A stretch of 64,000 nt of DNA, taken from NCBI GenBank assembly GCA_000320545.1, contig ADNK01002609.1, forward strand, positions 1,645 through 65,644. Direction: 5' to 3'. Below are positions 694 to 62,772 of the stretch, piece by piece. Position 1 is the first letter of the stretch; each line of letters starts with the position of its first letter. Below the pieces are notes generated by a model. That model saw nothing but the letters and a program-made list of their open reading frames with translations. It did no database searches and was not told the origin of the DNA. Origin of the DNA: Bigelowiella natans CCMP2755 (lineage: Eukaryota > Protista > Cercozoa). Position numbers and translations under genes: made by a program.

Positions 694-1517
694 TCACGAT
701 AACTTCAGGATGTCGATTTCGTCTATAGCTATCGCCTCAGAACGACACTGCTCGGAGCAAAACACTTGGTCAAGATACATGAACATGCCTTTATAAGTGG
801 ACGCCCTTTTGCACATCACGCATAAGTGGTTGCCATTCTCGTCAAAAGCGCGCTCAACACGTAGCTTCTTCATCTTGTTCGGAGGCGCAAACACCATTTT
901 GCCATCCCAAGAACTGCTGCCTAGGATACGGTCAAAGCTGTGACTCTGCTGGAGGGATCGATGGTCGGTGGAGCTAGCGCTGGCTGCTGCCTGGCATTTT
1001 TGCCGCCTTTTTCTCTTCGTAGACTGGAACATCGAGGCGGAGAGATTTCGCGATCTCTGAGAGCGTTTGAGGGCTATCGGTGCACTACTTTGCAAGCCAC
1101 CGCTTCTATTCTGTACCGGAGAACCGGATGATCTTCTAGTGGTTCCTAAATCTCCCTCTTGATTTAGAATGGTAGGGGTTGGAGGTGATGAAGTAATGTC
1201 AAAGTGGCCAACAATGCCGCTGCTAAAGCTGCAAAAGCTGCTTTGACTCAAACACTGGCTATTGACGCTACTCCCTCCCCTCTGCTTGCAAGGGCGGGGG
1301 GACGATGGTGGAGAGGATGCTATAGTTCCAATTCTCTGGGATTGAAGCATGTTTGTTGGAGGAGCCCCTGTCTGGGCCTTTGGGGTGTCAATGATCGGAA
1401 TGACCAAGAACTAAGAAATACATAAAGGATCGTTAGATTTTCTCTCATCATCATAGCATCTACTTTACTCTCTTGAAATGTGTAGAGAAACTGTCGCATG
1501 TTCTCAATGTCATGCAT
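694..1517 (-). CDS. FCS-like zinc finger (FLZ/DUF581) protein; two exons (1517-1464, 1410-694)
   Basis: C-terminal CVMC-x17-FCSEQC-RSEAIAIDE with FMY matches the FLZ consensus CX2CX17-19FCSX2C. N-terminus is Ser-rich and low complexity. A 53-nt GT..CTAAC..AG intron (1463-1411) joins MHDIENMRQFLYTFQESK in frame to the 694..1407 ORF. Confidence 0.75.
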
Positions 1518-11368: not shown

Positions 11369-12953
11369 CATTTGTATTGTATCTAGCATTGATGCGTATA
11401 AATTCGGTAGTTAGTTGTTGGTTGCTACTGAGATGGCCGTGCTCTTGAATATCTTCACTCACTCTGTCATTCACCTTTCTATTGACTGCACACAGAATTT
11501 GGCCCCTCTTGATGGTGACACGTCTGACCCTTACGTAACGGTCTGGAATAACCATAAGAGCATTTATCAACCGCCCCCCGCCCCCCCCTCCACACAAAAA
11601 CAATAAAACGGAACTAAAACTCCGCTTCATTCTGTCTTCTGCTAGCATTCCTATACTCAATCTATGGATGGTTTGTGCGTGCTAGGTTGAGTTTCTGGAT
11701 CCGTTTGGGACAACACGTATGTTACGATAGATGTTGGTGATGATGATAATGATGATGGCGATGATGGTATGCTTTGTTCTCTCTCGATTATCAATGATTT
11801 TCGAGAGATATCCACCATCGAATGCGAGAATCCGATGGAACGATTGCAATACGTGCATTCATACTACACAAAAAACAAACAAAATCAAATAGTAACTCGT
11901 ATCCCCCTCGCCCCCCTCCTCCCACCCACCCACCCACCCCGTCTCCCTCCTCCTTCTACTGATCTATTCTCCCCTCCGACGATGGCGGAATGGGAAAATG
12001 GCGAGCAGTCTTCAAGACTCGGACCGAGGTGATGAAAAAGTCGCTCAACCCAACTTGGAGGCACGAAATCCTGGGCGTTCCCCAGAGCATTCTGAATCGT
12101 TTCAGCTGCCTCCGCTTCGAGGTGTGGGATCACGATGTGCTGTCGGCTGATGACTGTATGGGCCATGCTCTGCTCACAGCGTCGTCCATCGAGAGAGCCA
12201 CGACCGTGGATGAAATAGAGGATAGCAGGGCCGAGGCCATCTGCGCCCCGTTCCCACCGAAGACCTCGTCGATACGGCTCGAGGACGCAAAGAGCACAGA
12301 GTTTGACGAGATTGAGAAGAGCATGTTTAAGATGACCCTAAAGCCCCGGCCAGGGATTAAGGACGTCGTGAGCGGCACTCTGCTCGTTAATGTGACCTGT
12401 AACGACCCTTACGCTATACAACTTGCCAAGGAGGTGTTACTACTAGTAATAATTGTAGCAGTTGCAGTTGTAGTAATAAAACAGGATAAGTAGTCGAGGA
12501 AGTATGTTGGATCGGTCATTTTCATACGTGCGTGCGTCTTTGCTGCGGGGGGGGGGGGGGGCGTGGTTGGCCATCATAGGGTCGGGGCTGATGGCAAAGT
12601 AGCCTCCAGCGACACTCGGTGAAAGGGAAAATGATTCTTTCAAAACGCACAGCATCTTTATTTGTGTACACCGTTGTTTTCTCCCCCGTGTATCACCATT
12701 AGGTAAGAGCCAATGAGGAGAAGAAGCTAAGAGCGGATATGATAAAGCTAGAAGCGAAGTCCAAGCTCCGAAAGGCGATGTCATTGGCCAAGAACTTTGG
12801 AAAGCAGTGGAAGGGCAAGGCAAGGATGGCGGCAATGCGGCGACAGCACGAAGAACAGCACAAGAAGGCGAAAAAGGCTCGGCGAAGAATCCGCAGACTC
12901 TCTGCTCCTAGCACCGAGTAATGAATCTAGATTATTTGGCACATTATATAAAT

Positions 12954-13556: not shown

Positions 13557-14285
13557 CTGTATATCCTATACGACAGCCGGGAGTCTGCAGATTTACGAGG
13601 AGAGGAATGCTGTTATTCTGGGAGCCCCTGAGACCCATAAATGCGACAGAGAAACCCATAGTTGTGGATTTGACTGAGAAGAAGAAGAAGGACAGGAAGA
13701 AGCCGAGACGCATTAAAGGCCTTACGATAAAGAAAGGCCCTTTCACCTTCTCCGAGGGATCGCTAGTCTCTATAGAGCCCGTAGTACAGGTATTTAGTGA
13801 TTAACAACACGTTGATTATGCATTGCTCATTTGGCTTACTGCTCTAGTCGCTTTGCCTCGATGCTGATTGCCTTCTCCGCCTCTCCGTTCGCTGTTTGTT
13901 GTTTCTTCAGGAGAAGATAGACGCTTCGGGCAACTTTATTTGCAAAATCGCTCCTGGGGTCTTCGATTGGTTAGGCCAACACTTGAAGTTCCTTGACTTG
14001 CATGGAAATAAGATCTTAGAGTTGCCTCCGGGATGCTTTGACGAATTGGTGAATCTCGAGACGCTCTATCTTCACCGCAATGTGATTGAGGAGCTTCCTG
14101 AAGGAATCTTTGACAAGCTTGTAAATTTGAAGCACCTATGGTTGCAAAGATGCCACATCAAACATCTAGACCAACTCGTATTCCGGAATCTCATTAACCT
14201 CACGCACCTCAACTTGCAGGTGTTTAGATGTTATTGTTGTTGCTGCTGCTACGCGCGCTCACTTTTCTCTCTCTCTCTATCTCCC

Positions 14286-14366
<81 letters not shown>

Positions 14367-14736
14367 AAGTTTCGCCGTACTTATCGTTACCTTCTTTCTT
14401 GAACAACAGCGTAACAGGATCAAGAAATTCAGAATGGGCATCTTTGACTCGTTAACAAATCTGATGAATTTGTTTGTCTTCGGCAATCGCAATAAGTAAG
14501 AAAGAGAGCGCTCATAATGAAATTGCGTTAGATCAGTGCGGGACGCTTCATTGCCTTGGTCTTACTTTCTGTCTGTCTACGTTTCTCTCTTCCCTACATA
14601 TCTCCACAGGTATCTTACAGATGGGGTTCTTGATGAGCTTCGAGTCTGTAAATGCTACGTTAGTCCCAGACATCAAATGGTTCGCGTGCATCCTACGTGC
14701 AAAGTGATACCCTTTCCTGACGAAAAGGTAGAATAG
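3727..14736 (+). CDS. Multi-exon protein with five tandem C2 domains, a basic/helical linker and C-terminal leucine-rich repeats (5' start uncertain)
   Basis: Spliced exons give five C2 motif sets: APMDSNGKSDPY..KKNLNPTWN..DHDLFGNDDFMG; AADSGGTSDPY..TKTLNPEWN..DRDIIGSNDFLG; MDSGGTSDPY..KKTLNPVW..DHDVIGTDDFIG; AADSGGTSDPF..KKNLNPRWN..DHDVFGSNDFLG; APLDGDTSDPY..KKSLNPTW..DHDVLSADDCMG. LRRs at 13911-14495 (LKFLDLHGNKILELPPGCFDELVNLETLYLHRNVIEELPEGIFDKLVNL). Stop at 14736. Confidence 0.8.
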
Positions 14737-26092: not shown

Positions 26093-27844
26093 TTAAGAGT
26101 CGTCGAGCTTAATGTCCAAGAACACATCCGAGTTCTTAGAAACACCGAGTACATCGTTCATGAAGGACGTGGAGTTGTGAATACAGCTGCCTCCTAGAAT
26201 GATCTTCGGGCCTGAAGGCCCCGACGCTTTATTCATTTCTGAGACCAGAGCTGCCTCGGAGTATGTTGTCCCCCCGATAACGTACACGAACACCTTGTCC
26301 ATGTTTCTCCCCTGGCCGACCGCATCCATGAAGGGATAATCATTCATTCCCAGCTTGTTCTTGAGCAAGCTGTCTAAGACGGATGAGAGCAGTGGCTTGT
26401 ACCGGGTGTACACGTTTTCGATCTCGCTCAGGCCAGAGAAGGCGTTCTTCACCATGGAAAGGAACCCTCTGTTCCTGTAGAGGTCCCCCCCCCTTACCGA
26501 GGCGCCCGCGTACTTCACTATCTCATCGCTGAATCTAGCCATTCGCTTCTCCTCGATGGTTTTGGCTTGCTCCTTTAGAACAGAGCGGACAGTTGACATC
26601 TCGTTCCTGTGCTTCTCATATCTCAAATGATAGAGAGACGCCATGCAGACCTTCCTCACGAATGTGACGCTGGAATCCCCCAGCAATCTCATGATCTCCG
26701 TGATAGCCTTCGAGTGATCATGGTCACACGCGAGATTTTGCTCAGCCTCTGATACGGCCATAAGCTTTTCCTCCTTCACTTTGCGGTTCATCTCCACCAT
26801 CACAGCAACGTGCTTCGACACGTTGCCTTGGAATGTCTTCAGCTCTGGATATTGCTCCACGAATTTTTGCATATCCTGGATAGTCTCGATTTTTTGGTTC
26901 CCTTTTTTCGCTTTATATTGAGATACCAAGTCCTTGATCGCTTTGCCAAGGTCCCCGAAGTTGTAAGTGTACGTCTTGGCGAAGAATTCGTCCTGCGTAG
27001 TTGACATTACGACCTGCTTCATATCCGGCTTAATGTCTGGCACATTGCTCATATCAACTCGGTTGCTGTCAATGGTCAGTAGCTCGTGGACCATCGCTTG
27101 ATAAGTCCATTGCATAAGAAGAGGCGTGATGGGGTCCTCTCGTCGATCTAGGATAAGCAGCACCGGTTGATTTGAGTCTCGGAAATCAAACACTTCATTT
27201 TCTTCCTTCATCTTGCTCACAATTTCGATTGCCACGGCCTTACTCAGGGCTGATGCTTTCTGATAGCGCACAAGTGGCCTCTTTTTTTGGGATAAGAGCA
27301 TTGATATGAGTCCTTCTACATTCCTTTCTAGAACAGCATTGTCAGCTTTCGTCCAGTTCGATCGTCTCGTATACAAAGACCGGGTTGAAGATAGATTGCA
27401 GTGCCATGACTCAGGAGTGACCGCAAAAAAATCAGCATAGTATTCTTGAACTTGCTTCACGAGCTCGTAATCATCTGCAGCAGCAATTGTCTTCAACTGT
27501 GCATCCCCGACAAAATTTGTGAAAAAGAGGTGATACTCTTTGAACTTGGGCTTTTGGAGAGCTTGCTGCAGAGCAGATAAGCTGGAAGAAGATGGTCGCA
27601 GGAGGCAAACAGCCTTAAGGTGGTTCATTGGAGTCTTGGAAGGTTTGGAAGGTGAGTCAATCTGCTCCACGATGAATACCTGCTTGGCGATGATCTCTGT
27701 CTGTGATATCACAAGGGAAACCATCTTCATGGTGTCCTTATCCACCAAGAGTGCCTTCATTCCACTCAACCCAACAATCTTCTCAACATAGCGCTTGAAC
27801 GCATCAATGGCAGAGAAGGAGCTCTTGCCTTTGTGATCGCTCAT
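26093..27844 (-). CDS. VPS45: Sec1/Munc18 family vacuolar protein sorting 45 (intronless, 583 aa)
   Basis: GMKALLVD, HLKAVCLLRP, VKQVQEYYADF, LLILDRREDPITPLLMQWTYQAMVHELL, NFGDLG, GNVSKHV, ENVYTRYKPLL, VIGGTTYSEA, ILGGSCIHNS are typical Vps45 motifs. Confidence 0.93.
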   Translation of the reverse strand: MSDHKGKSSFSAIDAFKRYVEKIVGLSGMKALLVDKDTMKMVSLVISQTEIIAKQVFIVEQIDSPSKPSKTPMNHLKAVCLLRPSSSSLSALQQALQKPKFKEYHLFFTNFVGDAQLKTIAAADDYELVKQVQEYYADFFAVTPESWHCNLSSTRSLYTRRSNWTKADNAVLERNVEGLISMLLSQKKRPLVRYQKASALSKAVAIEIVSKMKEENEVFDFRDSNQPVLLILDRREDPITPLLMQWTYQAMVHELLTIDSNRVDMSNVPDIKPDMKQVVMSTTQDEFFAKTYTYNFGDLGKAIKDLVSQYKAKKGNQKIETIQDMQKFVEQYPELKTFQGNVSKHVAVMVEMNRKVKEEKLMAVSEAEQNLACDHDHSKAITEIMRLLGDSSVTFVRKVCMASLYHLRYEKHRNEMSTVRSVLKEQAKTIEEKRMARFSDEIVKYAGASVRGGDLYRNRGFLSMVKNAFSGLSEIENVYTRYKPLLSSVLDSLLKNKLGMNDYPFMDAVGQGRNMDKVFVYVIGGTTYSEAALVSEMNKASGPSGPKIILGGSCIHNSTSFMNDVLGVSKNSDVFLDIKLDDS

Positions 27845-50234: not shown

Positions 50235-50951
50235 ATGGAGAAAAATGGTTCTGTCCCCAATCAACCACCCCCACCAACACTTGTCCAGTATCGGAGCCCC
50301 CTCCAGATCGAGTCTCCAAATGATGAGCCAAGACTGGCAGGAATGGAGGCACTGTTATCCAAGATTCTCCCCGACCGAATGTGGATGAATAAGGGGAATT
50401 TTCACGTACAATACGTTTCTAGTACTCCAGCAACAACTGCAGATGTTAGGAAACTGGAGGAACGCCTTGACAGGGAACTGAAAAAACAGGATGCACACAA
50501 TATAGGAGTATGTAACGTGCGGTCCCGCTTGCACGAACAAGCCTTCGATGAGATCATACGTCAGGTCACCATCACATGTGACGCACGCGGAACATTGTTG
50601 AAGAGGCTTCACGAGGAAATCAGGAAGCGGATACAGACTTATGAAACACTCTTCCAGAGTTCAAACTCTTACGGAGTCAGGTCAACCCTGAGGGGCAATA
50701 GCCACAAGGAAAAAATTAGAAATCGCATACAGGAGTTGGAGAGGGAAAATAAGCAGTTGGAATTAGATATTGAAAGACAAATGGCCAAAAGGGCGCAAAT
50801 TGAGGCGAAGAATAAAGAAGAGACTCTGAAAGTGAAACAGTCCCACGTCGAACAAGTACAGCAAGCCCGCGAAAAATATGATGCGCTTATGGTTGCTTAC
50901 ACAGATAAGGTTAGGGTGAGTTTCGAAGATAAAAGGAAAAAGAGGAGGTAG
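50235..50951 (+). CDS. DNALI1: Axonemal inner-arm dynein light intermediate chain p28 (Ax_dynein_light family), intronless
   Basis: ILPDRMW..QYVSSTPATTADVRKLEERLD..GVCNVRSRLHEQAFDEIIRQVTITCDARGTLLKRL..TYETLFQSSNSYGVR followed by coiled coil. Confidence 0.9.
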   Translation: MEKNGSVPNQPPPPTLVQYRSPLQIESPNDEPRLAGMEALLSKILPDRMWMNKGNFHVQYVSSTPATTADVRKLEERLDRELKKQDAHNIGVCNVRSRLHEQAFDEIIRQVTITCDARGTLLKRLHEEIRKRIQTYETLFQSSNSYGVRSTLRGNSHKEKIRNRIQELERENKQLELDIERQMAKRAQIEAKNKEETLKVKQSHVEQVQQAREKYDALMVAYTDKVRVSFEDKRKKRR

Positions 50952-51729: not shown

Positions 51730-52754
51730 CTACCCTTCAAGCTCGTCGAAAACAGAGCGAATGTGCTTCATATCCTGCGCCGCGAATTTTATGTCAGAGA
51801 TCTTGCAAATTAATCTCACCCGTCGTTTCGACATCAGCTTCGCTCTGGTGACGGAAACAAGGCCGTTCTCTGACAGTCCTGTGATCAGGTCAATGAACTG
51901 GGGATGTGAGGGATTGCATGATTTTAAGGTTGGCAGGCGGCTCGCGATGCGGCCGTTGGAGAACCCCTTGAACCACTTGGTGAATCGCGCGATGGTCACG
52001 TCTTTGCTTTTGTATATTTGGTGGTAAAATGCGAAAAGAGTGAGGAGCATCTTCTCCTGGATCGGAAGGGCTTTGATGCGAGAGACGTACTCCGACCCCA
52101 TCGAGCCGCTCAGCACGCGAGCCATGATGGATATGGTCACTTTTCCGCCATCACTATTTTCGTCTTGTTCTTCAGCGATCACTTGGTCGAGGCATTGCCT
52201 GATGTGAAGGAGGCAGTATATACACGACTACTCAGCCATGCGAAAATGGGGGCGGGGGAGGGGGGCGACCAAGAACGAAAAGGGGTTGGCTTGTCATGCT
52301 TTCTCTCGCTTACTTACCGGCAGATATCCATGCACTTTCGCACATCGCCTGAAACAGCAGAAACCTAGTCGAAAAGGGAGAGGAGTAGGGGCAAACTATC
52401 AGTGGAAAATTCTTCAAAGCCTGCCATGCCTCTACGAGAAACTGAAGTAAGAGAATTAGACCTTTCGAGCGCAGAATTGTAGGGCTCTGTCGTCAAAGAA
52501 GCTCTCCTCCTCCTCATCCTTTTCGTCATCTTCATCGTCATCACTGTCATCATCTTCTGCTTTCTTATTTGTTGTAGCAGCTATGCGCCGAGGAAGAACG
52601 GATTCAAAGCGAGCTCGAACGATATCAGAGAGTTCGGTGTGTGTGTAGGGCCTAAACACGAGCAGCTTTGGCTCGCAGGAGCGCGCGCGCAAACGTGGGA
52701 GGAACCGGTCGGTCAAGTCGATGTTATTCGATATTCCTGAAAGTGCATAACACA

Positions 52755-52794
<40 letters not shown>

Positions 52795-54152
52795 GGGGAG
52801 AAGAGGGGATAAGTGCACAAGAAATTCACCTCTTGATCTTGATGTCGGTTAATTTTCGCGACGTCTTTCATTAAATCAATCATTACCAATGAGAACGACA
52901 CTGGAACCGTACTTCTTAGGCCAGTCAAACAATTGATAGAGAACCGTCTGACGACGAGGAACGATAAATGATGAGAGAAGAATATAACGAATTTCAATGT
53001 CCCTTCCACAAAATTCAGTGTGCAGTGTCGAGTAATTATGCATCACACAGGCGAATGTATTCACATCAGGTTGAGGATAATTGCATATGGTCTCACCTGC
53101 GATCGTGTCAGTAGCGCATCGATCTCATCTATCACACAGACTCTGCGAACATTGATAAAATAAGTATTCGTTATGTTTAGCCGCAAGAGGATGAAGAATT
53201 CTGAATTAAGATGTACGTGAAGCGCTTATGGTTTTCGAGGAATTCGGTACGCAGCTCCCTGGCAGCTTCTATCGCATTTGAGCATCGTATCGAAGGTTGG
53301 ATTTCCCTCAAAATTTCGCTGTAGATTTCTTGAGGTCTGGCGAGTGTCATTGCATTTATCTCCACAAGATTCACATTGAGGGATGAGTTGGCGGCAAGCA
53401 CTTCACGACATACTTTGCCTACACAAAGCGATTTCCCTGTTCCAGGGCTGCCGCAGATGTATAAGCTATCCCCATGCTTGTTCTCGAGAGAAGCGGCTGA
53501 GATTTATGTGCATATTTACACAACGGGAAGTTGTCTATCTACATATTCTGGTGCAGAATCTATGCTACTGTTACTTCAGCATGACATCTTTCCCCCCTTA
53601 AATTCACTAGTTATTTCAATCGTGAGTTTTTGTTTCAGTCATTTATGTGTCAGTATAAATACATAGATAATTAGATAATTGCAAATACAGAAGAATGACA
53701 CAATACAATCTGCTCCTTGTTACTAAGGCTGGCAATAAGGGGCACCTAAGAAGTTGCGAATCTGAGACTGTTCACTATTCCTACAGCAAACAGATTCTGG
53801 AGGTGTGCTTGTCCGAAGGACTTCCCTGAGCTTGGACACCACATCTCGGAGCTTTCCCTCTTCATTCTCTTTGTTGTTCTCCTGGTCACTTGCAACTAGA
53901 TTTTGTGGTTTGAGCTCCACCTTTCTGTCCGAAGGGTAGTGCACCTTCTTCACTTTCTTCGAGAGAGTGGTGGGGGCAGTTTTCGTTGCCTTCGCGCAAG
54001 TTGAGGTATCTCGTCGGCCTAAGAAAACCAGCGTCATCATCTCATGTAACACATCCAAATGTAGATCGATACAAATCCTCCATACGTTTCTCTTTTCTCC
54101 AAACGTTCATTCTGGTCTGCCTAGGGCGCCCAGCAGTCCGTCTCGTTGGCAT
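51730..54152 (-). CDS. CDC6: Cell division control protein 6 (Cdc6/Orc1-family AAA+ replication licensing ATPase), multi-exon
   Basis: Start MPTRRTAGRPRQTRMNVWRKEK|gt at 54152. CRNSEQSQIRNFL, Walker A LYICGSPGTGKS, VEINAMTL, Walker B CVIDEIDAL, LYQLFDWP, LIGISNNIDLTDRFLPRL, LVFRPYT, ALQFCARKV, SGDVRKCMDIC, C-terminal winged helix. Confidence 0.9.
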
Positions 54153-54628: not shown

Positions 54629-57201
54629 ATGAAGATTTGCCAGATTGAGTTGAACGAATTTTGCTCCACGTTGAACACGGTAGGACAGAGAAATGTGAGA
54701 GAGAGTAAGTGCAATCAGCCCGGAGATTTGCTCATCAAGCGAGTACGCGGATTCTTTGCGGCGAACCCCAAATTCGATGCTCTAGCTCTTAAGGTTGAGA
54801 GTGTTATTTCGAAATTCCATAAATGTTTACGATTTCAATAATTAATTGTTTTTATGGCAAGAGGAGAGAAGCACGTTATAGCTGCATGTCAATAAGCATG
54901 GCGATCAGAAAGAAGCATTTTTAGATGCATGACGATACTCAGAACAACCTCATTCTTTCGTTGACATGATTTGCTCTTCAGTTTCCTAGCCCCAAGATTT
55001 TTAAAGCCAAAACTAGTGTCACACTCGGCGAGCTTCGCACGAAAACTTCGCAACTTTTCGAGAAGAAGGGAAATATCCGTGTTATCCTGCGAGAGGCGTC
55101 ACGCGAGGTTGTGTTCCTAACTGAGCCAGCCAATGGCAACCAATTATCATCGGGCGAATGTAAAGAGACAGCGACATCTTCAACAATGGATCTATTTCTA
55201 CGCCCTACTCCGAGGTACTCTTTGGACCCAGGCCTTTTGGTGCTCAACGACACGGTAATCTCCGTCAAAACTTCGGAGATTTTGGATCATCAGGGTAGCA
55301 TGAGCAAGCTCTCGATGTTCTGCCAGAAGAAGAGATTAGCGCCCCCTCATTACAGTGTGCGGCAGTTTCTGAAGCCAAATTGGCTAAGCCCTGAGGCTGT
55401 GGCTACCTTCGTGGCAGAGGTGGAGATTAATGATCCTCGTCCCAAGATGAAACCAACAACCCTTCGTCGCTTCGAGGGCTACAATTCTGTCAGCAAGAAG
55501 GCAGCCAAGGCCTCCGCTGCGCTCCAGGCCTGCATTTGGTTGTTTGAGATAAAGTTTCTAGATCCGAACTTGGACGTCGTGATGGATACTGGGAACCTTC
55601 TCCCGGCTATGGAGATTTCGTACCAACGCTCGCACAAAATTAGCAATCTGTACAGATTCATAGCGCAATTTGCCACGCCTAATCCTGCAGGCAAACAACA
55701 GCCTCTTGTGGCCATCTCACACAACGACATTTCTGGAAGAGTGCAGCCGCTTGCTATACCAAACGAGCGCCTCGATGATTTCTACAGACTCATTGCTGAC
55801 TCGTGGCACGAACCACTGTTCTTCAGCGAGGAGGCCGCGCACAGCACATACATTCTATTCTTCGACATTGACCTTAAACTCAAGAAGAAACCTCCCCCTT
55901 CTCCCAGCTCTCCACCCGGTCCCAAATGGAAGGGGGGGCACACAACACGGGTGATGATGGCGGTGATTAACGCGGTAAGCTCCGTGTACCACCCTCGTCT
56001 GGCAGCTCTTCGAGCACTCGAGTATATTTTCCACCGTAGAATCTCCCAACTCCGCAGCGGGGCGTTGGACCTCTCGTCGGCCGCCAGCTCGTGTGCTAGC
56101 CTGGTGCTCTCTTACGCCGATAACTTGGAGGATGAGAGCAAGGACAGTGTAGCCAACCTGATGCTAGTGGTCTCGGAGTCGAAGATCGATTGGCTTCGAT
56201 CTTACGGTAAAAAGGGCCTTCACATGCACTTCCCGCGCCTCTTCGTCGATAGCCGCACACACGAAATACTCTACCGCCTGATCCTCATTGAGCTCAAAGC
56301 ATGCTGCCCCGCTCCTGGTCTCTACGTTCATTGCGATTACACAGCGGCGCCGTATAACAAGCGTGCTACCACGGCTGGGTCATGGCCGACCGGAAAGATG
56401 CAACCCCCTTCCCCGCCATCTCCGGGTTTTGAATTCTACAGCCTACAGGAGGGATGGGGAGGGGACCACGACCGACTTGCTGGAGAGAGGGGAGAGCAAG
56501 AGGGCGCGCTGGACGCCGCGTGTGTGCTGGACCCACGCATTCGGATGATAGGGATGCGGAAGGCAGAGAAGTGTCGTTGTCCCGAGCGACTTCGCGCAGA
56601 GCGTCAATGCCGGAAGAGAAATCATAAGATCGACGTGGGTCGCCGCTATACCGTCACGGCGATATATGTGGCAATGACGACGATGGAGCTGATAGAGGAG
56701 GAAGAGAAAAGATGGATGAGGAAGAGGGGGGGCAGGGGCAGGAGCAGCGGGAAGGCTGACAGTGTCAAGAAGAGACGGAAGAAGATCGCTGCTAGGGTCG
56801 CTCTCGCTATTCCTTCGTTCCGGTATGGATGGAGGCTGTGGCGCAAAGATGCTCAGGAGATGCAACGGTGCGTCACTGTTTATGTATGACTCTGCTCTCC
56901 AAATGCACTTACTTCTTGCCCTCCGCTCCCACCACCACCACCACCACCACCACATTCAATACTTCTTATATCAAGCAACACGAGATTCCTTCGCTACGCC
57001 ATCAGGTTCTCCATTGTAGACCAGCAGGAGAACACAGTGTCTTTCGAGCAGGCCCGTCACATACGAGAGACACGTGTAGAGCTACTCCACCTTCTCTCGC
57101 TCCGGAAATCCGCCCCCAGTAAGTAAGTAAGTAAGTAAGGACGGAAGGAAGGCGACAAAATGAATGAAGGAGGAGAAGGGGTTTGGAAATACAGATGGCA
57201 A

Positions 57202-57235
<34 letters not shown>

Positions 57236-57463
57236 CTGTATTATGTGGCCAATGCTATCACGTCTCTCTGTTTCGCAACATTAGGAACCCAAGCTTGGAT
57301 TCCAGAGTTCCACGAAGATGACGAAAACAATGACGGTGGTGGTAGCAGTACCTGTGACGACATCGACGACGATTACACAAACACCAGCAGGGAAAAGAGC
57401 AACGTGAAAGTAAGGGGAGCTGCTCATTCTACCGTTGCGGGCGTTGAGGATTATGGAGTTAGA

Positions 57464-57498
<35 letters not shown>

Positions 57499-58524
57499 CG
57501 ATTACAAAGGTGATGATGCCGATTTGCAAAGGAAAATAGTGGAGGAACATAGGGCTCATTGTGACAATGATAACATTGAGGAAGAAGGGAGGGAGGGGAA
57601 GGGGGGCGAGAAGAGGCGAAATGATGATAGGGCGATAGCGCATAGTAGTCACGCTATTGAGGAGGCACTCGCAGCTCTAGACGGAATCGAGAAATGCACG
57701 GATTTGATGTCGGCCCCCATGATCATGACGAATGAGGAACAGAACAATAGCGGGATTGCTTCTGGGAGTACGACTGAGCGCAAATCTATCAAGATGCGCG
57801 GCAAACAGACTGAAAAAGTATCATCAGCTAAGGTGAGGCCATTACAACGCGAATCATCATCAACGTTAGGAGATTTCCTTGAATCCCTCAAAAGACGCTG
57901 GAACGCAAAGGATGTTGTGAAGGGGAGGAGCAAGGAAGAGGAGGAGAATCAGGAGGAGGGAGGTGATGATGACATTGATAGGGAAGATGGATATCAGACT
58001 ATTGCTGGCAACATCGACGAGAAGAAGGCGAATGTGCTGAACGAGGGAAAGTGCGTACTACGGAAGCTTTCAGAGCGCGAATATGTGCTCTTAGTTCTGC
58101 GGGGAAAGACAACGGGATGTAGTAGGGGCGATGATGTTGTTAAGGCAAAAAATGGATTTAATGGCAGTGATGAAAAGCATCAAGATATGATCGGCAATAA
58201 TGGTAGTTTAGTGGATGATGTTGAGTGAACGACATTTCTCACCCTCACTCTCTCTCTATCTCTTTCTCTTACTTATCATTCACTTCGCTCAGTATTTGTT
58301 ATACACATGCAAACGTTGAAATCACCAGTAGATTGGTTCTTTCCGCGTGCTGTAGCGTTTATTATCATTGTCATCACCATCATCACCCTTTGAAGGCGGC
58401 AAAATGGGAGAGGCGGAGAAGGGGCACTACTCCGACAAGATCGATGGGAGGCTATATCTGGCTACTCTAACGATGAATCAAGCGGCTAAAAGAATCAATG
58501 AATGGATGACCTCCGTATTATTAC

Positions 58525-58561
<37 letters not shown>

Positions 58562-59093
58562 GTATACATGTATACATTATTCTATGTGCACGTGTCCCCG
58601 AAGGAGGGCCTCGTGCTTTTCTCACCCCCCCTCCCCTTCCCTCTGCATACTGCTATCATTACTACAGGTGGAGAGCTTCAAGTATGTTGAATTCGAGAAG
58701 GCTGGAGCGCTGCAAAATACTTCTCCCCTGATTTCTGACATTGCAGCAGAGACCAAGTTCAGATATAAGGTGCTATTATGTGCAATCTGCACTCCGCTCA
58801 ACCCCCCTCACCACCTCTCCTTTCCCTTCACCCTCATTTTCCTTTTTTCGCTTCGTTCATTTCCAGCAGTAATCAACAATGCATTCATCATCGAATCATC
58901 GTTGTCGTGAAAACGACAAATTAACTGTTTTTGGATAGGCGCGTGTGCCGTGGGTGGAAGCTGGTATTGAGGACATTCTCACAGGCCTTCCGATGCCGAA
59001 TGACAGGGTATTTGTTAGTTATCCAGTAATACGTTCATGTTTACTAAAAATAATGAATATCAAAAGTATGTGTACATATGTAGATATGAATAT

Positions 59094-59171
<78 letters not shown>

Positions 59172-62100
59172 TTTTGTGTGTTGATGTGGTGTTGCTTACT
59201 CGATGTAGCTTGCTCGGAGGGTTTGCTTTATGCAGGTCATACAGCATCTCCACAGACAGGTTACTACAAAAGAAGGAAGGAAAGGAGGGAAAGGAGGAAT
59301 TAGAGGAGGAGGAAGAGAGGCATAGAAACAGAGAGACACAGGGAAAGAAACATTTTAACCCAGTAGCACAGTTTTCTTCTTTATCTCCCTCTTCTTCTTC
59401 TTCCTTTCCTGTCGCTATTTTCGTCGATCATAGGGCCGAATTGATGATGAGCTTTTCCCTATTGGATGGAAGGAGAGGCAGCTACAGCAGCAGCAGCAGC
59501 AAGAGGAAACAGAGAGCAAAGAAGACGATGCTGATGATTACAGTGAAACCTTTGCATCCCCATGCCGCAACAGTAACACGGCAAACGAGAAAAAGAAGAA
59601 GAAGAATTACAACAAAAGAAGCTCTAAGACCACCGCAAGCACCCTTGCATCGCATCTCAAAACAACATCTGTGCGTCGGCACCTTCCGTCAGCGTTTATT
59701 CCTGAGAAGGGGAGGGGGTGCGAGGACGAGGGAGAGAAGAAGGAGAACGAATGGGAAGAGGGGAAGAAGAAGTTGGGAGAATCGAAAGAAGCGATAAAGA
59801 CGAAACCACAACAGCTGCAGCTGCTCTCCGAAAAGGCCTTCGTCGCGTATAGAATTGATCTTGGGGAGAAGATGTTTGGATGGTGCGTTATCTTGCCCAG
59901 GCATGCAGAGAACATCCTTGGCCGTCAGATGTGTGTTCCACTGCCTCATCGAGACCATGACTTAAAGAATGTGACAACGACAACGACGACCACGACGACG
60001 CCACAGCAGCAGCGCCCGCAGCAAAACAATGAAAACTGCATTAATAGCAGTATGCCAGAGTGCGTATGGCTTCGGAGGCTTGGGGGGGATAGCAGCCAGA
60101 AGCATTTGTTTCCTCCATCATCGTCGTTGTCGCTGCCGTCGTCTATGTTCTCCTCGGGAGAAAACGGAGGAGGGGGGGGAGAAGGGGGAGGAAGAGGAGT
60201 AAGTCTGATGAAACTTGCGCGTCATTTCCACCAGATGATCTTTACCATGTTACTAGCAAAGGAGGGGCGCATTACGGCCCTCCACCAACTCCTCGTTCAA
60301 ATCTCACAAGACAATCAACGAACCGGAAGCAGCAGTCCCAGAGGACTCTATCTTATTGCCCCTCTCCACAGAGTGAGGAGAACAACAACAGGCAGTTGCG
60401 ACAATAGCAGTAGCAACGGTAAGTGGGAAGTAGACTGGGAGACAATGCAGCATTTGGTTTGCCTTGTCAGGAATCCAGAGCAGTATCGTTACGCTAGCAG
60501 TAGTGGTAGTCGTACCAGCAGTGTTAATGCAGCGCGGGGCGACGGTAGCAGCAACAAAATGGCAAAGCACAACCGTTCCTGTCTTCATCTGCCTAAACGA
60601 TGGCTTCTCAATCAAGGAGAAGAAGAAGAAGAAGAACACGGAAAAGAAGAAGAGAATCCGTTAATAAGAGGAGGAGGAGATGGTAAGCACCGCGATAAAG
60701 CCAGAGGAAATGGTAGAGGGGGGAAGAGAGAAAAACGACAAAGGGGGGCGGGGAGAATCCTGATCCGAGAGATGTGCGTTATCAGCCTCTATAACCTGCT
60801 AGTCTACAAGCCGCTCGGAGCAGAATCCGACGTGACGATGGACGACCTCTTCCCCGATGGTAGTGGGAGGACATACAAGCGACACTTCCAGCTGCAGATG
60901 GGGAGGGTTCTCAAGGCAAAAGACCAGCTCCTCCTCAGGGTGCAGAACGACTTCTGGCGCATCAGCAACTCGATTCATACTGCTGCTGGCCAAAACACCA
61001 CCACCAAGACAAGAGGAGTAGGGTTCCCTATGACAGCTGCGGCTAACGCTGCTGCTGCTACTACCACTACCAGTAGCAATGATGACAACTCCTATGCCCT
61101 GATTCCTCAAGAGCTCACTTGGTGGTTCGGAGTAAACCTATCCTCGTTGGCGCGTCTTCCCTACTTTCTTTCCGAATGGCAAGCGTGCCTCTCCCTCCAC
61201 GACCTCGCGAAAAGCATTGCCTACCCCCTACCATGTTTCTCCCCGTCCCCCGCTGCTGCTGCTGCCACGGTTCCAGCGGTCATGTTCGGGGAGGGAAAGC
61301 GACGGTTCAGGCTGTTGCGTGCTTCCTTAACCAGCCCAAACGCACAACCGGGATTTGCACGGAACTGGGAGCAGCTCGAGTTCCTCGGTGATGCGGTGCT
61401 GGAGATGCTGATCGTCGAAAGCCTTTTCTACCTCTACCCTGATGACGAGGTCCGCCTCACACGTGACTCGCAGGCCGTTCTCCGCAATGCGAACCTCCGC
61501 GATTTGTACGTGAATGCTCGTCTCCCGCAGTACGCACACATCGATCCGTACGTGCAGGACCATTGGTATCCTCTCTGTGGCTTTTCGCGTCCCGTCGCTC
61601 ACTTTACTCACAACTCTGCCGCCGCGGGTGATAACAGGTTCAAACGACTACGTGCTGTTAGCGGGGGGGGCAGCAGGAGCAAAGTCAAAGGAGCCGAAAA
61701 TGCCGGTAGTAGCGGCCTGGGCAACGACCTGAACAAGATTACGCTGCAGCTTAAGCAGATGAGCGACTCCGCGGAGGCATTGGTTGGTGCTTTCTATGCA
61801 CTCGCATGCGACGTAAATCCGCGCGAGGGGCTAGAGAGCGCACGGCCCTTCGTGACCGACGTGCTCGGTGTGCGACTTCCTTCAAAGCGCGAGAGAGATG
61901 CTCGCTTTGAGCAATACATGCAGCGGATTCGCAGCCTGCGACTGGGAGGACATGGAGGGCAGATGGCCATGTTGGCGAGAGCAGAAGCATCTGTCTCCCG
62001 CTTTTACAAAGTCACAGGCTATCGCTTTCTCAACTCAAACCTCCTTATATCGGCTCTCACATCCAAGGCCGTCGATGCGCGTAACAACTATGAGGCGTTG

Positions 62101-62536
62101 GAGAAGCTGGGCGACGCGATCATCAAGACGATGGTGTCCACCCGGTTGTACGAGCGTGCGGATACATTCTGCATGACGCCGCACCACCTGCACAAGCTCA
62201 GGCTTCAGTTTGTGCACAACAACTTGTTCGGGTGAGAGCACATATGAACCGAATGCACACTAGTAAAGTGTCATATTATATGCTAAAAAAGGAGCGATGC
62301 TATTACTTATTTGCGTGCATCATATGTCTGCAGGTACGTCTTCTACTCGTCAGGGTTGTTCAATAATGCACGCCTCCCGCCGGACGGGCACGTGTATGAA
62401 AACTGCGCGAGGGAGCTCAAGAAATTCGAACAAGGAATGAGAGGAATCGAAGGTATGAGCAGCAGCAGCCACGATGTTCTTCACATTTGGGGCAAAGATA
62501 GCAGCAGTATCAATAGCAGCGCATCGCATCTCCTGC

Positions 62537-62567
<31 letters not shown>

Positions 62568-62772
62568 CGTGGCAAATAGAATTCCGTACGTGCACCAGCC
62601 TGATTTTCCAAAGGTTGTGGCGGATATGTTTGAGGCGTTCATCGGCGCTGTGTATCTCGACTCCGGACGCAATCTAAACGAGACATGGCGCGTGTTTGAA
62701 CGCTTCGTTCAATGGCGAGAAAACGTCCGCCACAAAATTGAAGTGTACTCAGCATTGTGGCAATCCAAGTGA
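54629..62772 (+). CDS. Dicer-like RNase III protein fused to an AEP primase-polymerase domain: DUF283 - AEP - acidic linker - DUF283 - platform - PAZ - RNase IIIa - RNase IIIb (~2200 aa)
   Basis: In-frame GT-AG model: 54629-54679, 54719-54793, 54982-56867, 57006-57118, 57285-58202, 58396-58514, 58668-58769, 58939-59007, 59209-59259, 59434-62231, 62334-62772. RNase III signatures NWEQLEFLGDAVL..MSDSAEALVGA and NYEALEKLGDAII..VADMFEAFIGAVYLDSG. PAZ-like FPDGSGRTYKRHF..DQLLLRV..LIPQEL. AEP motifs LFFDID, KGLHMHFP, ALD..RIRMIG. Confidence 0.85.

What the first reader, a model, noticed from the sequence alone, without database searches (positions are those of the whole stretch)
54629..62772. Dicer fused to a primase-polymerase (AEP): candidate synthesise-and-dice small-RNA enzyme
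Seen in sequence: canonical GT-AG junctions join the 55111, 57164, 58368, 59671 and 62311 ORFs into one frame. The N-terminal half carries the three AEP catalytic motifs: I, YILFFDID (~55850-55872); II, KKGLHMHFP (~56209-56235); III, ALD..RIRMIGMRK (~56506-56562). The C-terminal half has platform, PAZ and two RNase III domains with all four acidic catalytic residues each (EFLGD/DSAE; EKLGD/DMFE). Established: canonical Dicers have an N-terminal DExD/H helicase here, and AEP enzymes synthesise RNA or DNA de novo on single-stranded templates. Inference: the protein could make its own double-stranded substrate or primers and cut them, an RdRP-independent silencing or antiviral route. I do not know of a described Dicer-AEP architecture.
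Basis: partly seen in the sequence, partly recalled or inferred. Interest (0 to 1): 0.93.

Follow-up and report, generated by a model that had tools for sequence, protein, structure and literature searches.

The report
Dicer-like gene carrying a giant-virus primase-polymerase
A marine alga (a chlorarachniophyte, probably Bigelowiella natans) has a helicase-less Dicer-like gene with an apparently active primase-polymerase domain of giant-virus type embedded in it, an unreported combination that could couple synthesis of a complementary strand to dicing, though no transcript yet shows that both halves sit on one mRNA.

Summary
The two domain identifications hold. One uninterrupted 592-codon ORF (55111-56889) encodes a Dicer DUF283 ("Dicer_dimer") domain followed by an AEP primase-polymerase core. 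The core keeps every residue that is invariant in its relatives. Its AlphaFold model matches ASFV C962R PrimPol, poxvirus D5/E5 and giant-virus primases. Those relatives are stand-alone genes on giant-virus-like metagenome contigs.

Downstream on the same strand, 59434-62772 encodes a Dicer core. It has weak, collinear platform and PAZ matches, then RNase IIIa and IIIb with all eight acidic catalytic residues. There is no helicase and no C-terminal dsRBD.

A nine-exon GT-AG model of 2096 codons is frame-consistent. Such a path also appears in 100 of 100 shuffled linkers, so it proves nothing alone. Support for one gene is indirect:
- Homology backs the first and last junctions.
- Exons 3-5 score as coding.
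- The Dicer core frame is coding for 145 codons before its first ATG, so it needs upstream exons.
- DUF283 and platform-PAZ-RNase III flank the AEP in normal Dicer order.

I put one-gene fusion at about 0.65. No close homolog, transcript or paper was found. "Synthesise-and-dice" is inference. The AEP sits after DUF283 and does not replace the helicase.

The parts
55186..56867 (+). Exon 1 (inside ORF 55111-56889): a 37-residue N-terminal lead, the DUF283 domain and the AEP catalytic core in one uninterrupted reading frame.
   Evidence: ORF list; Pfam Dicer_dimer and AEP_C962R, both above cut-off; donor GT at 56868.
55297..55572 (+). DUF283 / Dicer dimerisation domain (dsRBD-like fold).
   Evidence: Pfam Dicer_dimer 34.1 bits against a cut-off of 23.7, well ahead of generic dsrm at 15.5 bits. 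hhalign places it at the DUF283 columns of a Dicer profile, E 4e-4.
55720..56643 (+). AEP primase-polymerase core: motif I DxD 55864-55872, motif II K.G.H 56209-56223, motif III D/R/K 56512-56562, Cys/His knuckle and GR 56572-56643. It carries three lineage-specific low-complexity loops.
   Evidence: Alignment A1 invariant columns; representative search hits are AEP_C962R/PPL4 proteins; AF2 model pTM 0.66; Foldseek top matches are the ASFV PrimPol Prim/Pol domain, MPXV E5, VACV D5 and giant-virus primases.
57006..57118 (+). Exon 2: conserved helix of the AEP family that follows the core (the leucine-rich S-L-R motif). Strong donor (a GTAAGT repeat) at 57119.
   Evidence: hhalign to the family profile at the expected columns, 13 columns, 54% identity, E 7.8e-4; phases.
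57285..58202 (+). Exon 3: 305-codon acidic, low-complexity linker (inside ORF 57164-58228), with no detectable homology.
   Evidence: ORF of 354 codons; codon score above 97.5% of null windows; no Pfam or AEP-family match.
58396..58514 (+). Putative exon 4 (39 codons). It contains ATG 58404, the only candidate start in exons 4 and 5 for a separate downstream gene (exons 6 and 7 each hold a later one).
   Evidence: GT-AG and phase; codon score exceeded by 2% of null windows; no homology.
58668..58769 (+). Putative exon 5 (34 codons, no ATG).
   Evidence: GT-AG and phase; codon score exceeded by 0.6% of null windows; no homology.
58939..59007 (+). Putative exon 6 (23 codons); weakly supported.
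   Evidence: GT-AG and phase; null fraction 0.086.
59209..59259 (+). Putative exon 7 (17 codons); not distinguishable from noise.
   Evidence: GT-AG and phase; null fraction 0.46.
59434..62231 (+). Exon 8 (932 codons): low-complexity lead with no ATG before 59869; platform remnant 60211-60453; PAZ C-terminal half 60826-60963 and connector; RNase IIIa 61369-61797; first part of RNase IIIb 62011-62231.
   Evidence: Frame open from 59434; the 145 codons before the first ATG score above all null windows; hhalign to a Dicer profile, probability 99.2, E 8e-20; segment tests; Pfam Ribonuclease_3 65 bits; PDB hits DCL3, DCL1 and human Dicer; Foldseek top matches are DCL3 and mammalian Dicer.
62334..62772 (+). 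Exon 9: rest of RNase IIIb (62572-62667, catalytic D 62623 and E 62632), a short tail and the stop at 62770-62772. No dsRBD.
   Evidence: Pfam Ribonuclease_3, profile positions 72-102; sequence reading and phase.

Best explanation
This is a nuclear, intron-bearing gene of a chlorarachniophyte alga. It encodes a helicase-less Dicer-like protein of about 2100 residues. An AEP primase-polymerase module of giant-virus (Nucleocytoviricota) type, plus a long acidic linker, lies between the DUF283 domain and the platform-PAZ-RNase IIIa-RNase IIIb core.

Shown:
- DUF283 and the AEP core share one ORF.
- The AEP keeps the catalytic DxD, H and D residues and has the AEP fold.
- The downstream part is a Dicer core with both catalytic centres intact.

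Inferred:
- All nine exons are one mRNA.
- The module was captured from a giant virus or an endogenous viral element and has since taken on host codon usage.
- It works as a polymerase-coupled Dicer. The AEP makes a complementary strand, most plausibly RNA on single-stranded DNA or RNA of viruses, virophages or repeats. The tethered RNase III pair then cuts the resulting duplex into small RNAs. This would be analogous to the coupling of RdRP and Dicer in other eukaryotes.
For: - One ORF holds Pfam Dicer_dimer and AEP_C962R, both above cut-off.
- The AEP core invariant columns of the 13 relatives (all but one, which is nearly invariant once the window is added) are kept in the window sequence.
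- The AEP fold is supported: Foldseek probability 1.0 to ASFV PrimPol, MPXV E5/VACV D5, and Clandestinovirus, Pandoravirus and Medusavirus primases.
- The relatives are stand-alone 290-530 aa genes on dense, intron-less, ORFan-rich metagenome contigs. One carries Pox_VLTF3 and one a weak PCNA hit.
- Exon 2 continues the AEP family homology across the first intron.
- DUF283, platform, PAZ, connector, RNase IIIa and RNase IIIb match a Dicer profile in collinear order, on either side of the AEP.
- The Dicer core frame is coding for 145 codons upstream of its first ATG, so it needs upstream exons. Exons 3, 4 and 5 score as coding in the modelled frame while the introns do not.
- The only two-gene split that keeps exons 4 and 5 leaves 175 bases between stop and start.
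- Intron sizes are 102-201 bases. They carry microsatellites like those interrupting the reading frame of the neighbouring multi-piece Cdc6 gene.
- Host setting: Cdc6, dynein light chain and Vps45 lie nearby. Vps45 is 78% identical to Chlorarachnion.
Against: - No transcript, predicted protein or ortholog covering either half was found in 1.8 billion representatives or in the length-limited searches. This holds even though other proteins of the window are in MMETSP and EukProt. Expression and splicing are therefore unproven.
- A stop-free GT-AG path through the linker occurs in all shuffles.
- Donors of exons 3-7 are weak, and exons 6 and 7 are not distinguishable from noise.
- In-frame stops follow directly if the donors of exon 2 (57124) or exon 3 (58226) are not used, so shorter products are possible.
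- PAZ is not found by Pfam.
- The C-terminal zinc-finger module of the AEP family is not detectable here.
- To my knowledge, no AEP is known to make the double-stranded RNA that Dicer cuts.
Confidence: 0.6

Rival explanations
1. These are two neighbouring genes on the same strand. Gene A encodes DUF283-AEP, with or without the acidic tail, and ends at the stop 58226-58228 (or at 57124-57126). Gene B is a separate Dicer-like gene that starts at ATG 58404 or at a small upstream exon. Any functional link would then act in trans.
For: In-frame stops lie just past the donors of exons 2 and 3. ATG 58404 sits in a good context at the start of exon 4. GT-AG paths are expected by chance. No spanning transcript or protein was found.
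Against: The gap between the stop of gene A and ATG 58404 would be only 175 bases. The other gene spacings seen in the window are roughly 0.6-1.1 kb. The gap looks like the other introns, being pyrimidine-rich with a CT repeat. DUF283 would be separated from the rest of its Dicer. The Dicer frame has no ATG for 145 coding-like codons.
Confidence: 0.27
2. The AEP stretch is an evolutionary relic of an integrated giant-virus gene. It is either not expressed or retained without polymerase activity, for example as a structural or nucleic-acid-binding spacer. The locus then functions simply as a helicase-less Dicer.
For: No peptide matching the AEP ORF from this organism or its relatives is in the transcriptome-derived collections, while neighbouring genes are present. 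There are large low-complexity insertions in the AEP loops, and the family's C-terminal zinc-finger module is lost. Endogenous giant-virus and virophage DNA has been reported in Bigelowiella natans (PMC5294986 and PMC13196603, citing Blanc et al. 2015).
Against: The frame is open for 592 codons. At about 25% overall identity, every core residue invariant in the family is still present. Codon usage resembles host genes. Homology continues across a spliceosomal intron, which points to long residence under selection.
Confidence: 0.1
3. An assembly chimera or mis-join places a viral AEP next to a Dicer gene.
For: No direct evidence. The window is a single assembly and cannot be checked against reads.
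Against: DUF283 and the AEP are in one ORF. Composition and codon usage are continuous, and host-type introns and microsatellites run throughout.
Confidence: 0.03

Closest known systems
Helicase-less Dicer-like proteins of protists (DUF283 or PAZ plus two RNase III domains, for example Giardia Dicer and the roughly 800-residue Dicer_dimer + RNase III proteins P0023, P0033 and P0037)
   Same: Tandem RNase IIIa and IIIb with complete catalytic residues, a PAZ/connector-like segment, DUF283 at the N-terminus and no DExD/H helicase.
   Different: About 1200 extra residues lie between DUF283 and the platform: an AEP polymerase core, an acidic linker and small exons. There is no C-terminal dsRBD. 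Identity to any Dicer is only 20-28%.
Nucleocytoviricota AEP primases (ASFV C962R PrimPol, poxvirus D5/E5, Pfam AEP_C962R / PPL4) and their stand-alone metagenomic relatives P0001-P0015
   Same: The AEP fold, the DxD, H and D motifs, an internal Cys/His knuckle and the conserved helix after the core.
   Different: There is no fused D5-type helicase and no C-terminal zinc-finger module. The gene sits in a host nuclear locus with spliceosomal introns, joined to DUF283 and probably to a Dicer core.
Physically coupled RdRP-Dicer systems (Tetrahymena RDRC-Dcr2, fission yeast RDRC-Dcr1) and Neurospora QDE-1, which makes RNA from single-stranded DNA (from my own knowledge, not tested here)
   Same: The proposed logic is the same: a polymerase makes the second strand and hands it directly to a Dicer.
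   Different: Those polymerases are double-psi-barrel RdRPs and act as separate polypeptides. Here the polymerase would be an AEP on the same chain, and its template and product are unknown.
Eukaryotic PrimPol (CCDC111)
   Same: It belongs to the same broad NCLDV-herpes branch of AEPs, from my own knowledge. It is a eukaryotic nuclear-encoded AEP used outside canonical priming.
   Different: No sequence match to any PDB chain, PrimPol included. PrimPol is absent from the top Foldseek matches. No UL52-type zinc finger was detected.

Membership tests
Dicer / Dicer-like (tandem RNase III) | Two RNase III domains in one polypeptide, each with its four acidic catalytic residues | tested here: met
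   Pfam Ribonuclease_3 at 65 and 26 bits. Catalytic E/D columns are invariant in A4. IIIb is completed in exon 9. PDB and Foldseek best matches are DCL3, DCL1 and mammalian Dicer.
Dicer / Dicer-like (tandem RNase III) | PAZ domain with platform and connector helix upstream of RNase IIIa | tested here: inconclusive
   No Pfam PAZ or platform hit. hhalign gives collinear matches to the platform (E 0.0064) and the PAZ C-terminal half (E 0.022), and these are included in a 99.2% probability alignment. The AF2 model of this part has pLDDT below 50.
Dicer / Dicer-like (tandem RNase III) | DUF283 (Dicer dimerisation) domain | tested here: met
   Pfam Dicer_dimer 34.1 bits against a cut-off of 23.7; hhalign at the DUF283 columns. 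Caveat: the same Pfam model also hits a non-Dicer phosphatase protein, P0007.
Dicer / Dicer-like (tandem RNase III) | N-terminal DExD/H helicase and C-terminal dsRBD (canonical metazoan and plant form) | tested here: not met
   No helicase or dsrm hit in any exon. The upstream neighbour is Cdc6 on the other strand. The protein ends about 35 residues after RNase IIIb.
Dicer / Dicer-like (tandem RNase III) | Measured cleavage of dsRNA into small RNAs | not testable with these tools
   Needs a biochemical assay.
AEP superfamily, NCLDV-type (Pfam AEP_C962R) | Catalytic motifs I (DxD), II (H) and III (D) | tested here: met
   Invariant columns D89, D91, K204, G206, H208, D305, R315 and K321 of A1.
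AEP superfamily, NCLDV-type (Pfam AEP_C962R) | Profile match above the curated threshold, and the AEP fold | tested here: met
   AEP_C962R 30.5 bits against a cut-off of 23. Foldseek probability 1.0 to the ASFV PrimPol Prim/Pol domain and to giant-virus primases. The model is of moderate quality: pLDDT 60, pTM 0.66.
AEP superfamily, NCLDV-type (Pfam AEP_C962R) | Accessory module used for priming (C-terminal zinc finger of the stand-alone relatives, or a fused D5-type helicase) | tested here: not met
   The relatives carry a conserved Cys/His module about 100-150 residues after the core. Exons 3-7 show no match to it.
AEP superfamily, NCLDV-type (Pfam AEP_C962R) | Template-dependent primer synthesis or extension | not testable with these tools
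   Needs a biochemical assay.

The most novel reading that the evidence does not exclude
One polypeptide both synthesises a complementary strand, using a polymerase domain captured from a giant virus, and dices the product. This would be an RdRP-independent route to small RNAs, possibly an antiviral or anti-virophage arm of a host known to carry endogenous giant-virus and virophage DNA.
Probability: 0.25. Interest if true: 0.92.

Novelty: new variant of a known kind. Interest (0 to 1): 0.78.

Why it matters
Every RNAi pathway described so far that amplifies or creates dsRNA does so with RdRPs of the double-psi-barrel type, or relies on convergent transcription. A Dicer that carries its own AEP polymerase would be a new way to generate Dicer substrates. 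It would also be a clear case of a host taking a giant-virus replication enzyme into a defence or silencing protein. It gives a directly testable question: can an AEP make RNA duplexes or hybrids that feed RNAi? The system is tractable, because Bigelowiella and relatives now have cultured giant viruses (PMC13196603). Even the minimal certain result is unreported as far as I could find: a DUF283-AEP fusion lying next to, or within, a Dicer gene.

Tried and rejected
- The search for homologous proteins with the 854-residue ORF was swamped by low-complexity words and gave nothing. Restricting it to the RNase III region found only distant Dicers, with no self hit or ortholog.
- The all-library search with the 592-residue ORF found only 16 distant hits, none with RNase III.
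- An exon 3/exon 4 junction pattern in metagenome and metatranscriptome contigs gave no match.
With five sequences it returned one 2.4 kb metagenome contig and nothing in IMG/VR.
- No RNase III lies next to the viral AEP genes in loci L001-L008, and there is no second AEP or Dicer copy in the window.
- Exons 3-7 against the AEP family profile, and exons 4 and 5 against the Dicer profile, gave no significant match. A "CF" match of exon 7 at the zinc-finger position has E 0.7 and was rejected.
- Pairwise DUF283 against the helicase-less Dicer P0023 gave no match.
- The AF2 model of exon 8 is confident only in the RNase III domains, so it cannot settle PAZ.
- The Vps45 protein is not on record in the contig index, so no genomic record name was obtained.
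- Rfam found nothing in the window.
Coordinates were derived from alignment column numbers instead.
Everything was done exon by exon, by reference.
- Considered and rejected: AEP replacing the helicase (it lies after DUF283), a close PrimPol relative and a recent viral insert (introns and host-like codon usage).
Full report
**Setting**

The window is eukaryotic nuclear DNA. It has GC of about 46%, spliceosomal introns and many microsatellites.
- Two of its proteins are exact entries in MMETSP and EukProt: an axonemal dynein light chain at 50235-50951 and a Vps45/Sec1 protein at 26096-27844 on the minus strand.
- The closest named relatives of the Vps45 are chlorarachniophytes: Chlorarachnion 78%, Norrisiella 74% and Amorphochlora 68%.
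- The source is therefore a chlorarachniophyte with a sequenced genome, very probably Bigelowiella natans. That species name is an inference.
- The gene directly upstream of the finding is a multi-exon Cdc6 homolog on the opposite strand, at about 51730-54058. No helicase exons of a Dicer can lie upstream.

**The N-terminal half**

ORF 55111-56889 is open for 592 codons. Pfam finds two families in it, both above their curated thresholds: Dicer_dimer (DUF283) and AEP_C962R.

An exhaustive HMMER search of 1.84 billion representatives gave only 16 hits, the best at 72 bits and 36% identity.
- Almost all are 290-530-residue proteins whose only Pfam matches are AEP_C962R and PPL4.
- One is a phosphatase protein with DUF283-like repeats.

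In the alignment with 13 of these hits, the window sequence keeps the family's AEP core invariants: the motif I aspartates, the Lys-Gly-His of motif II, the Asp/Arg/Lys of motif III and a Cys/His knuckle.

The AlphaFold model (pLDDT 60, pTM 0.66; the low-confidence parts are lineage-specific loops) matches AEP primases at Foldseek probability 1.0:
- the Prim/Pol domain of ASFV C962R;
- the AEP domains of MPXV E5 and vaccinia D5;
- in the viral library, primases of Clandestinovirus, Pandoravirus, Medusavirus and a phaeovirus.

**Origin of the AEP**

The relatives come only from metagenomes. They lie on densely packed, intron-less, ORFan-rich contigs. One contig carries the giant-virus core gene VLTF3 and another a weak PCNA hit. 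A giant-virus origin of the module is thus the best reading.

Endogenous giant-virus and virophage DNA has been reported in B. natans, and giant viruses of chlorarachniophytes are now in culture (PMC5294986, PMC13196603). The module itself is not a raw insert. Its codon usage resembles host genes, and its homology continues across an intron. The 37-codon exon at 57006-57118 matches the conserved helix that follows the core in the family.

The Cys/His module that ends the stand-alone relatives is not detectable downstream.

**The C-terminal half**

The frame of ORF 59671 is open from 59434.
- Against a profile of PAZ-bearing Dicers it aligns with 99.2% probability, from the C-terminal half of PAZ through the connector and RNase IIIa into RNase IIIb.
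- Tested alone, the platform and PAZ pieces give only weak hits at the right columns.
- Pfam sees no PAZ, and the structure model is poor there.
- RNase IIIa and IIIb are solid. This rests on Pfam, on PDB hits to DCL3, DCL1 and human Dicer, on Foldseek top matches DCL3 and mammalian Dicer, and on all eight acidic residues being present.
- The last intron (62232-62333) is confirmed because exon 9 completes RNase IIIb.
- There is no C-terminal dsRBD.

**Architecture**

DUF283 aligns to the DUF283 columns of the same Dicer profile. The Dicer parts therefore appear in their normal order, and the AEP lies between DUF283 and the platform. The AEP does not take the helicase's place. It looks like an insertion into a Dicer that lacks a helicase. 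Short Dicers of that kind exist elsewhere.

**One gene or two**

A nine-exon model starting at ATG 55186 has GT-AG at every intron and consistent phases. It has no internal stops, spans 6291 coding bases, and its introns are 102-201 bases.

That alone means little. After shuffling the 1.2 kb linker, a stop-free GT-AG path still exists in 100 of 100 trials. The evidence that counts is as follows.
- Homology supports the first and last junctions.
- Exon 2 ends at a strong GTAAGT-repeat donor.
- Exons 3, 4 and 5 score as coding in the modelled frame. Their scores are exceeded by 2.5%, 2% and 0.6% of stop-free null windows. The introns do not score as coding.
- The 145 codons of exon 8 that precede its first ATG score above every null window, so the Dicer core needs upstream exons.
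- The only way to keep exons 4 and 5 in a separate gene is to start at ATG 58404, which is 175 bases after the stop that would end the upstream gene.
- DUF283 would otherwise be cut off from its Dicer.

Against one gene:
- No transcript or predicted protein for either half was found.
- The donors of exons 3-7 are weak, and exons 6 and 7 are indistinguishable from noise.
- In-frame stops follow directly if the donors of exons 2 or 3 are skipped.

I put one mRNA at about 0.65.

**Mechanism**

Shown: an apparently catalytically competent AEP fused to a DUF283 domain, and a catalytically competent Dicer core on the same strand 2.3 kb downstream.

Inferred: the AEP makes a complementary strand and the Dicer part cuts the duplex. 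The nearest functional analogues are RdRP-Dicer complexes and QDE-1, but the polymerase fold is different. That comparison is from my own knowledge.

With the family's terminal zinc-finger module missing, the enzyme may extend or fill in rather than prime de novo. Alternatively, DUF283 and PAZ may supply the template grip. Its template and product are unknown.

**Novelty**

Four full-text searches combining Dicer, RNase III or RNAi with AEP, PrimPol or primase found nothing relevant. Two more, on Bigelowiella with Dicer and with Argonaute and RdRP, found no description of this gene. No protein in the searched libraries combines this AEP with RNase III. I rate it a new variant of a known kind: a Dicer-like protein with an unprecedented polymerase insertion.

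Noticed in passing
window 51730-54058 (minus strand): A multi-exon Cdc6 homolog, transcribed divergently from the Dicer-like gene. Its introns carry CT/GA microsatellites like those in the finding.
   Followed up: partly
window 26096-27844 (minus strand) and 50235-50951 (plus strand): Intron-less genes for Vps45 (Sec1 family, 583 aa) and the axonemal inner-arm dynein light chain (238 aa). Both are exact matches to MMETSP or EukProt entries, and they were used to place the organism among the chlorarachniophytes.
   Followed up: yes
window 694-1407 (minus strand), 11990-12493 and 13896-14402 (plus strand): ORFs with zf-FLZ, C2 and leucine-rich-repeat domains. These are probably exons of other host genes.
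   Followed up: no
P0007 (786 aa, ENA contig): A protein with an NIF/CTD-phosphatase domain, a dsRBD and three stretches matching Dicer_dimer at 116 bits. DUF283-like modules therefore also occur outside Dicers, which limits how diagnostic that domain is.
   Followed up: partly
L005 882-2213 and 10001-10885; L008 212-1318 and 4498-6081: Uncharacterised giant-virus-like metagenome contigs carrying the stand-alone AEP family together with VLTF3 or a weak PCNA hit. This AEP family has no named member.
   Followed up: partly
window 57186-57233, 57466-57500, 58530-58560, 59100-59170 and many other sites: ATG/GAT trinucleotide runs give poly-Met or poly-Asp in coding frames. Long TA and TG microsatellites sit in introns. 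Homopolymer amino-acid runs are frequent throughout the window.
   Followed up: no
ATG 55186 is sufficient as the start.
   Followed up: partly
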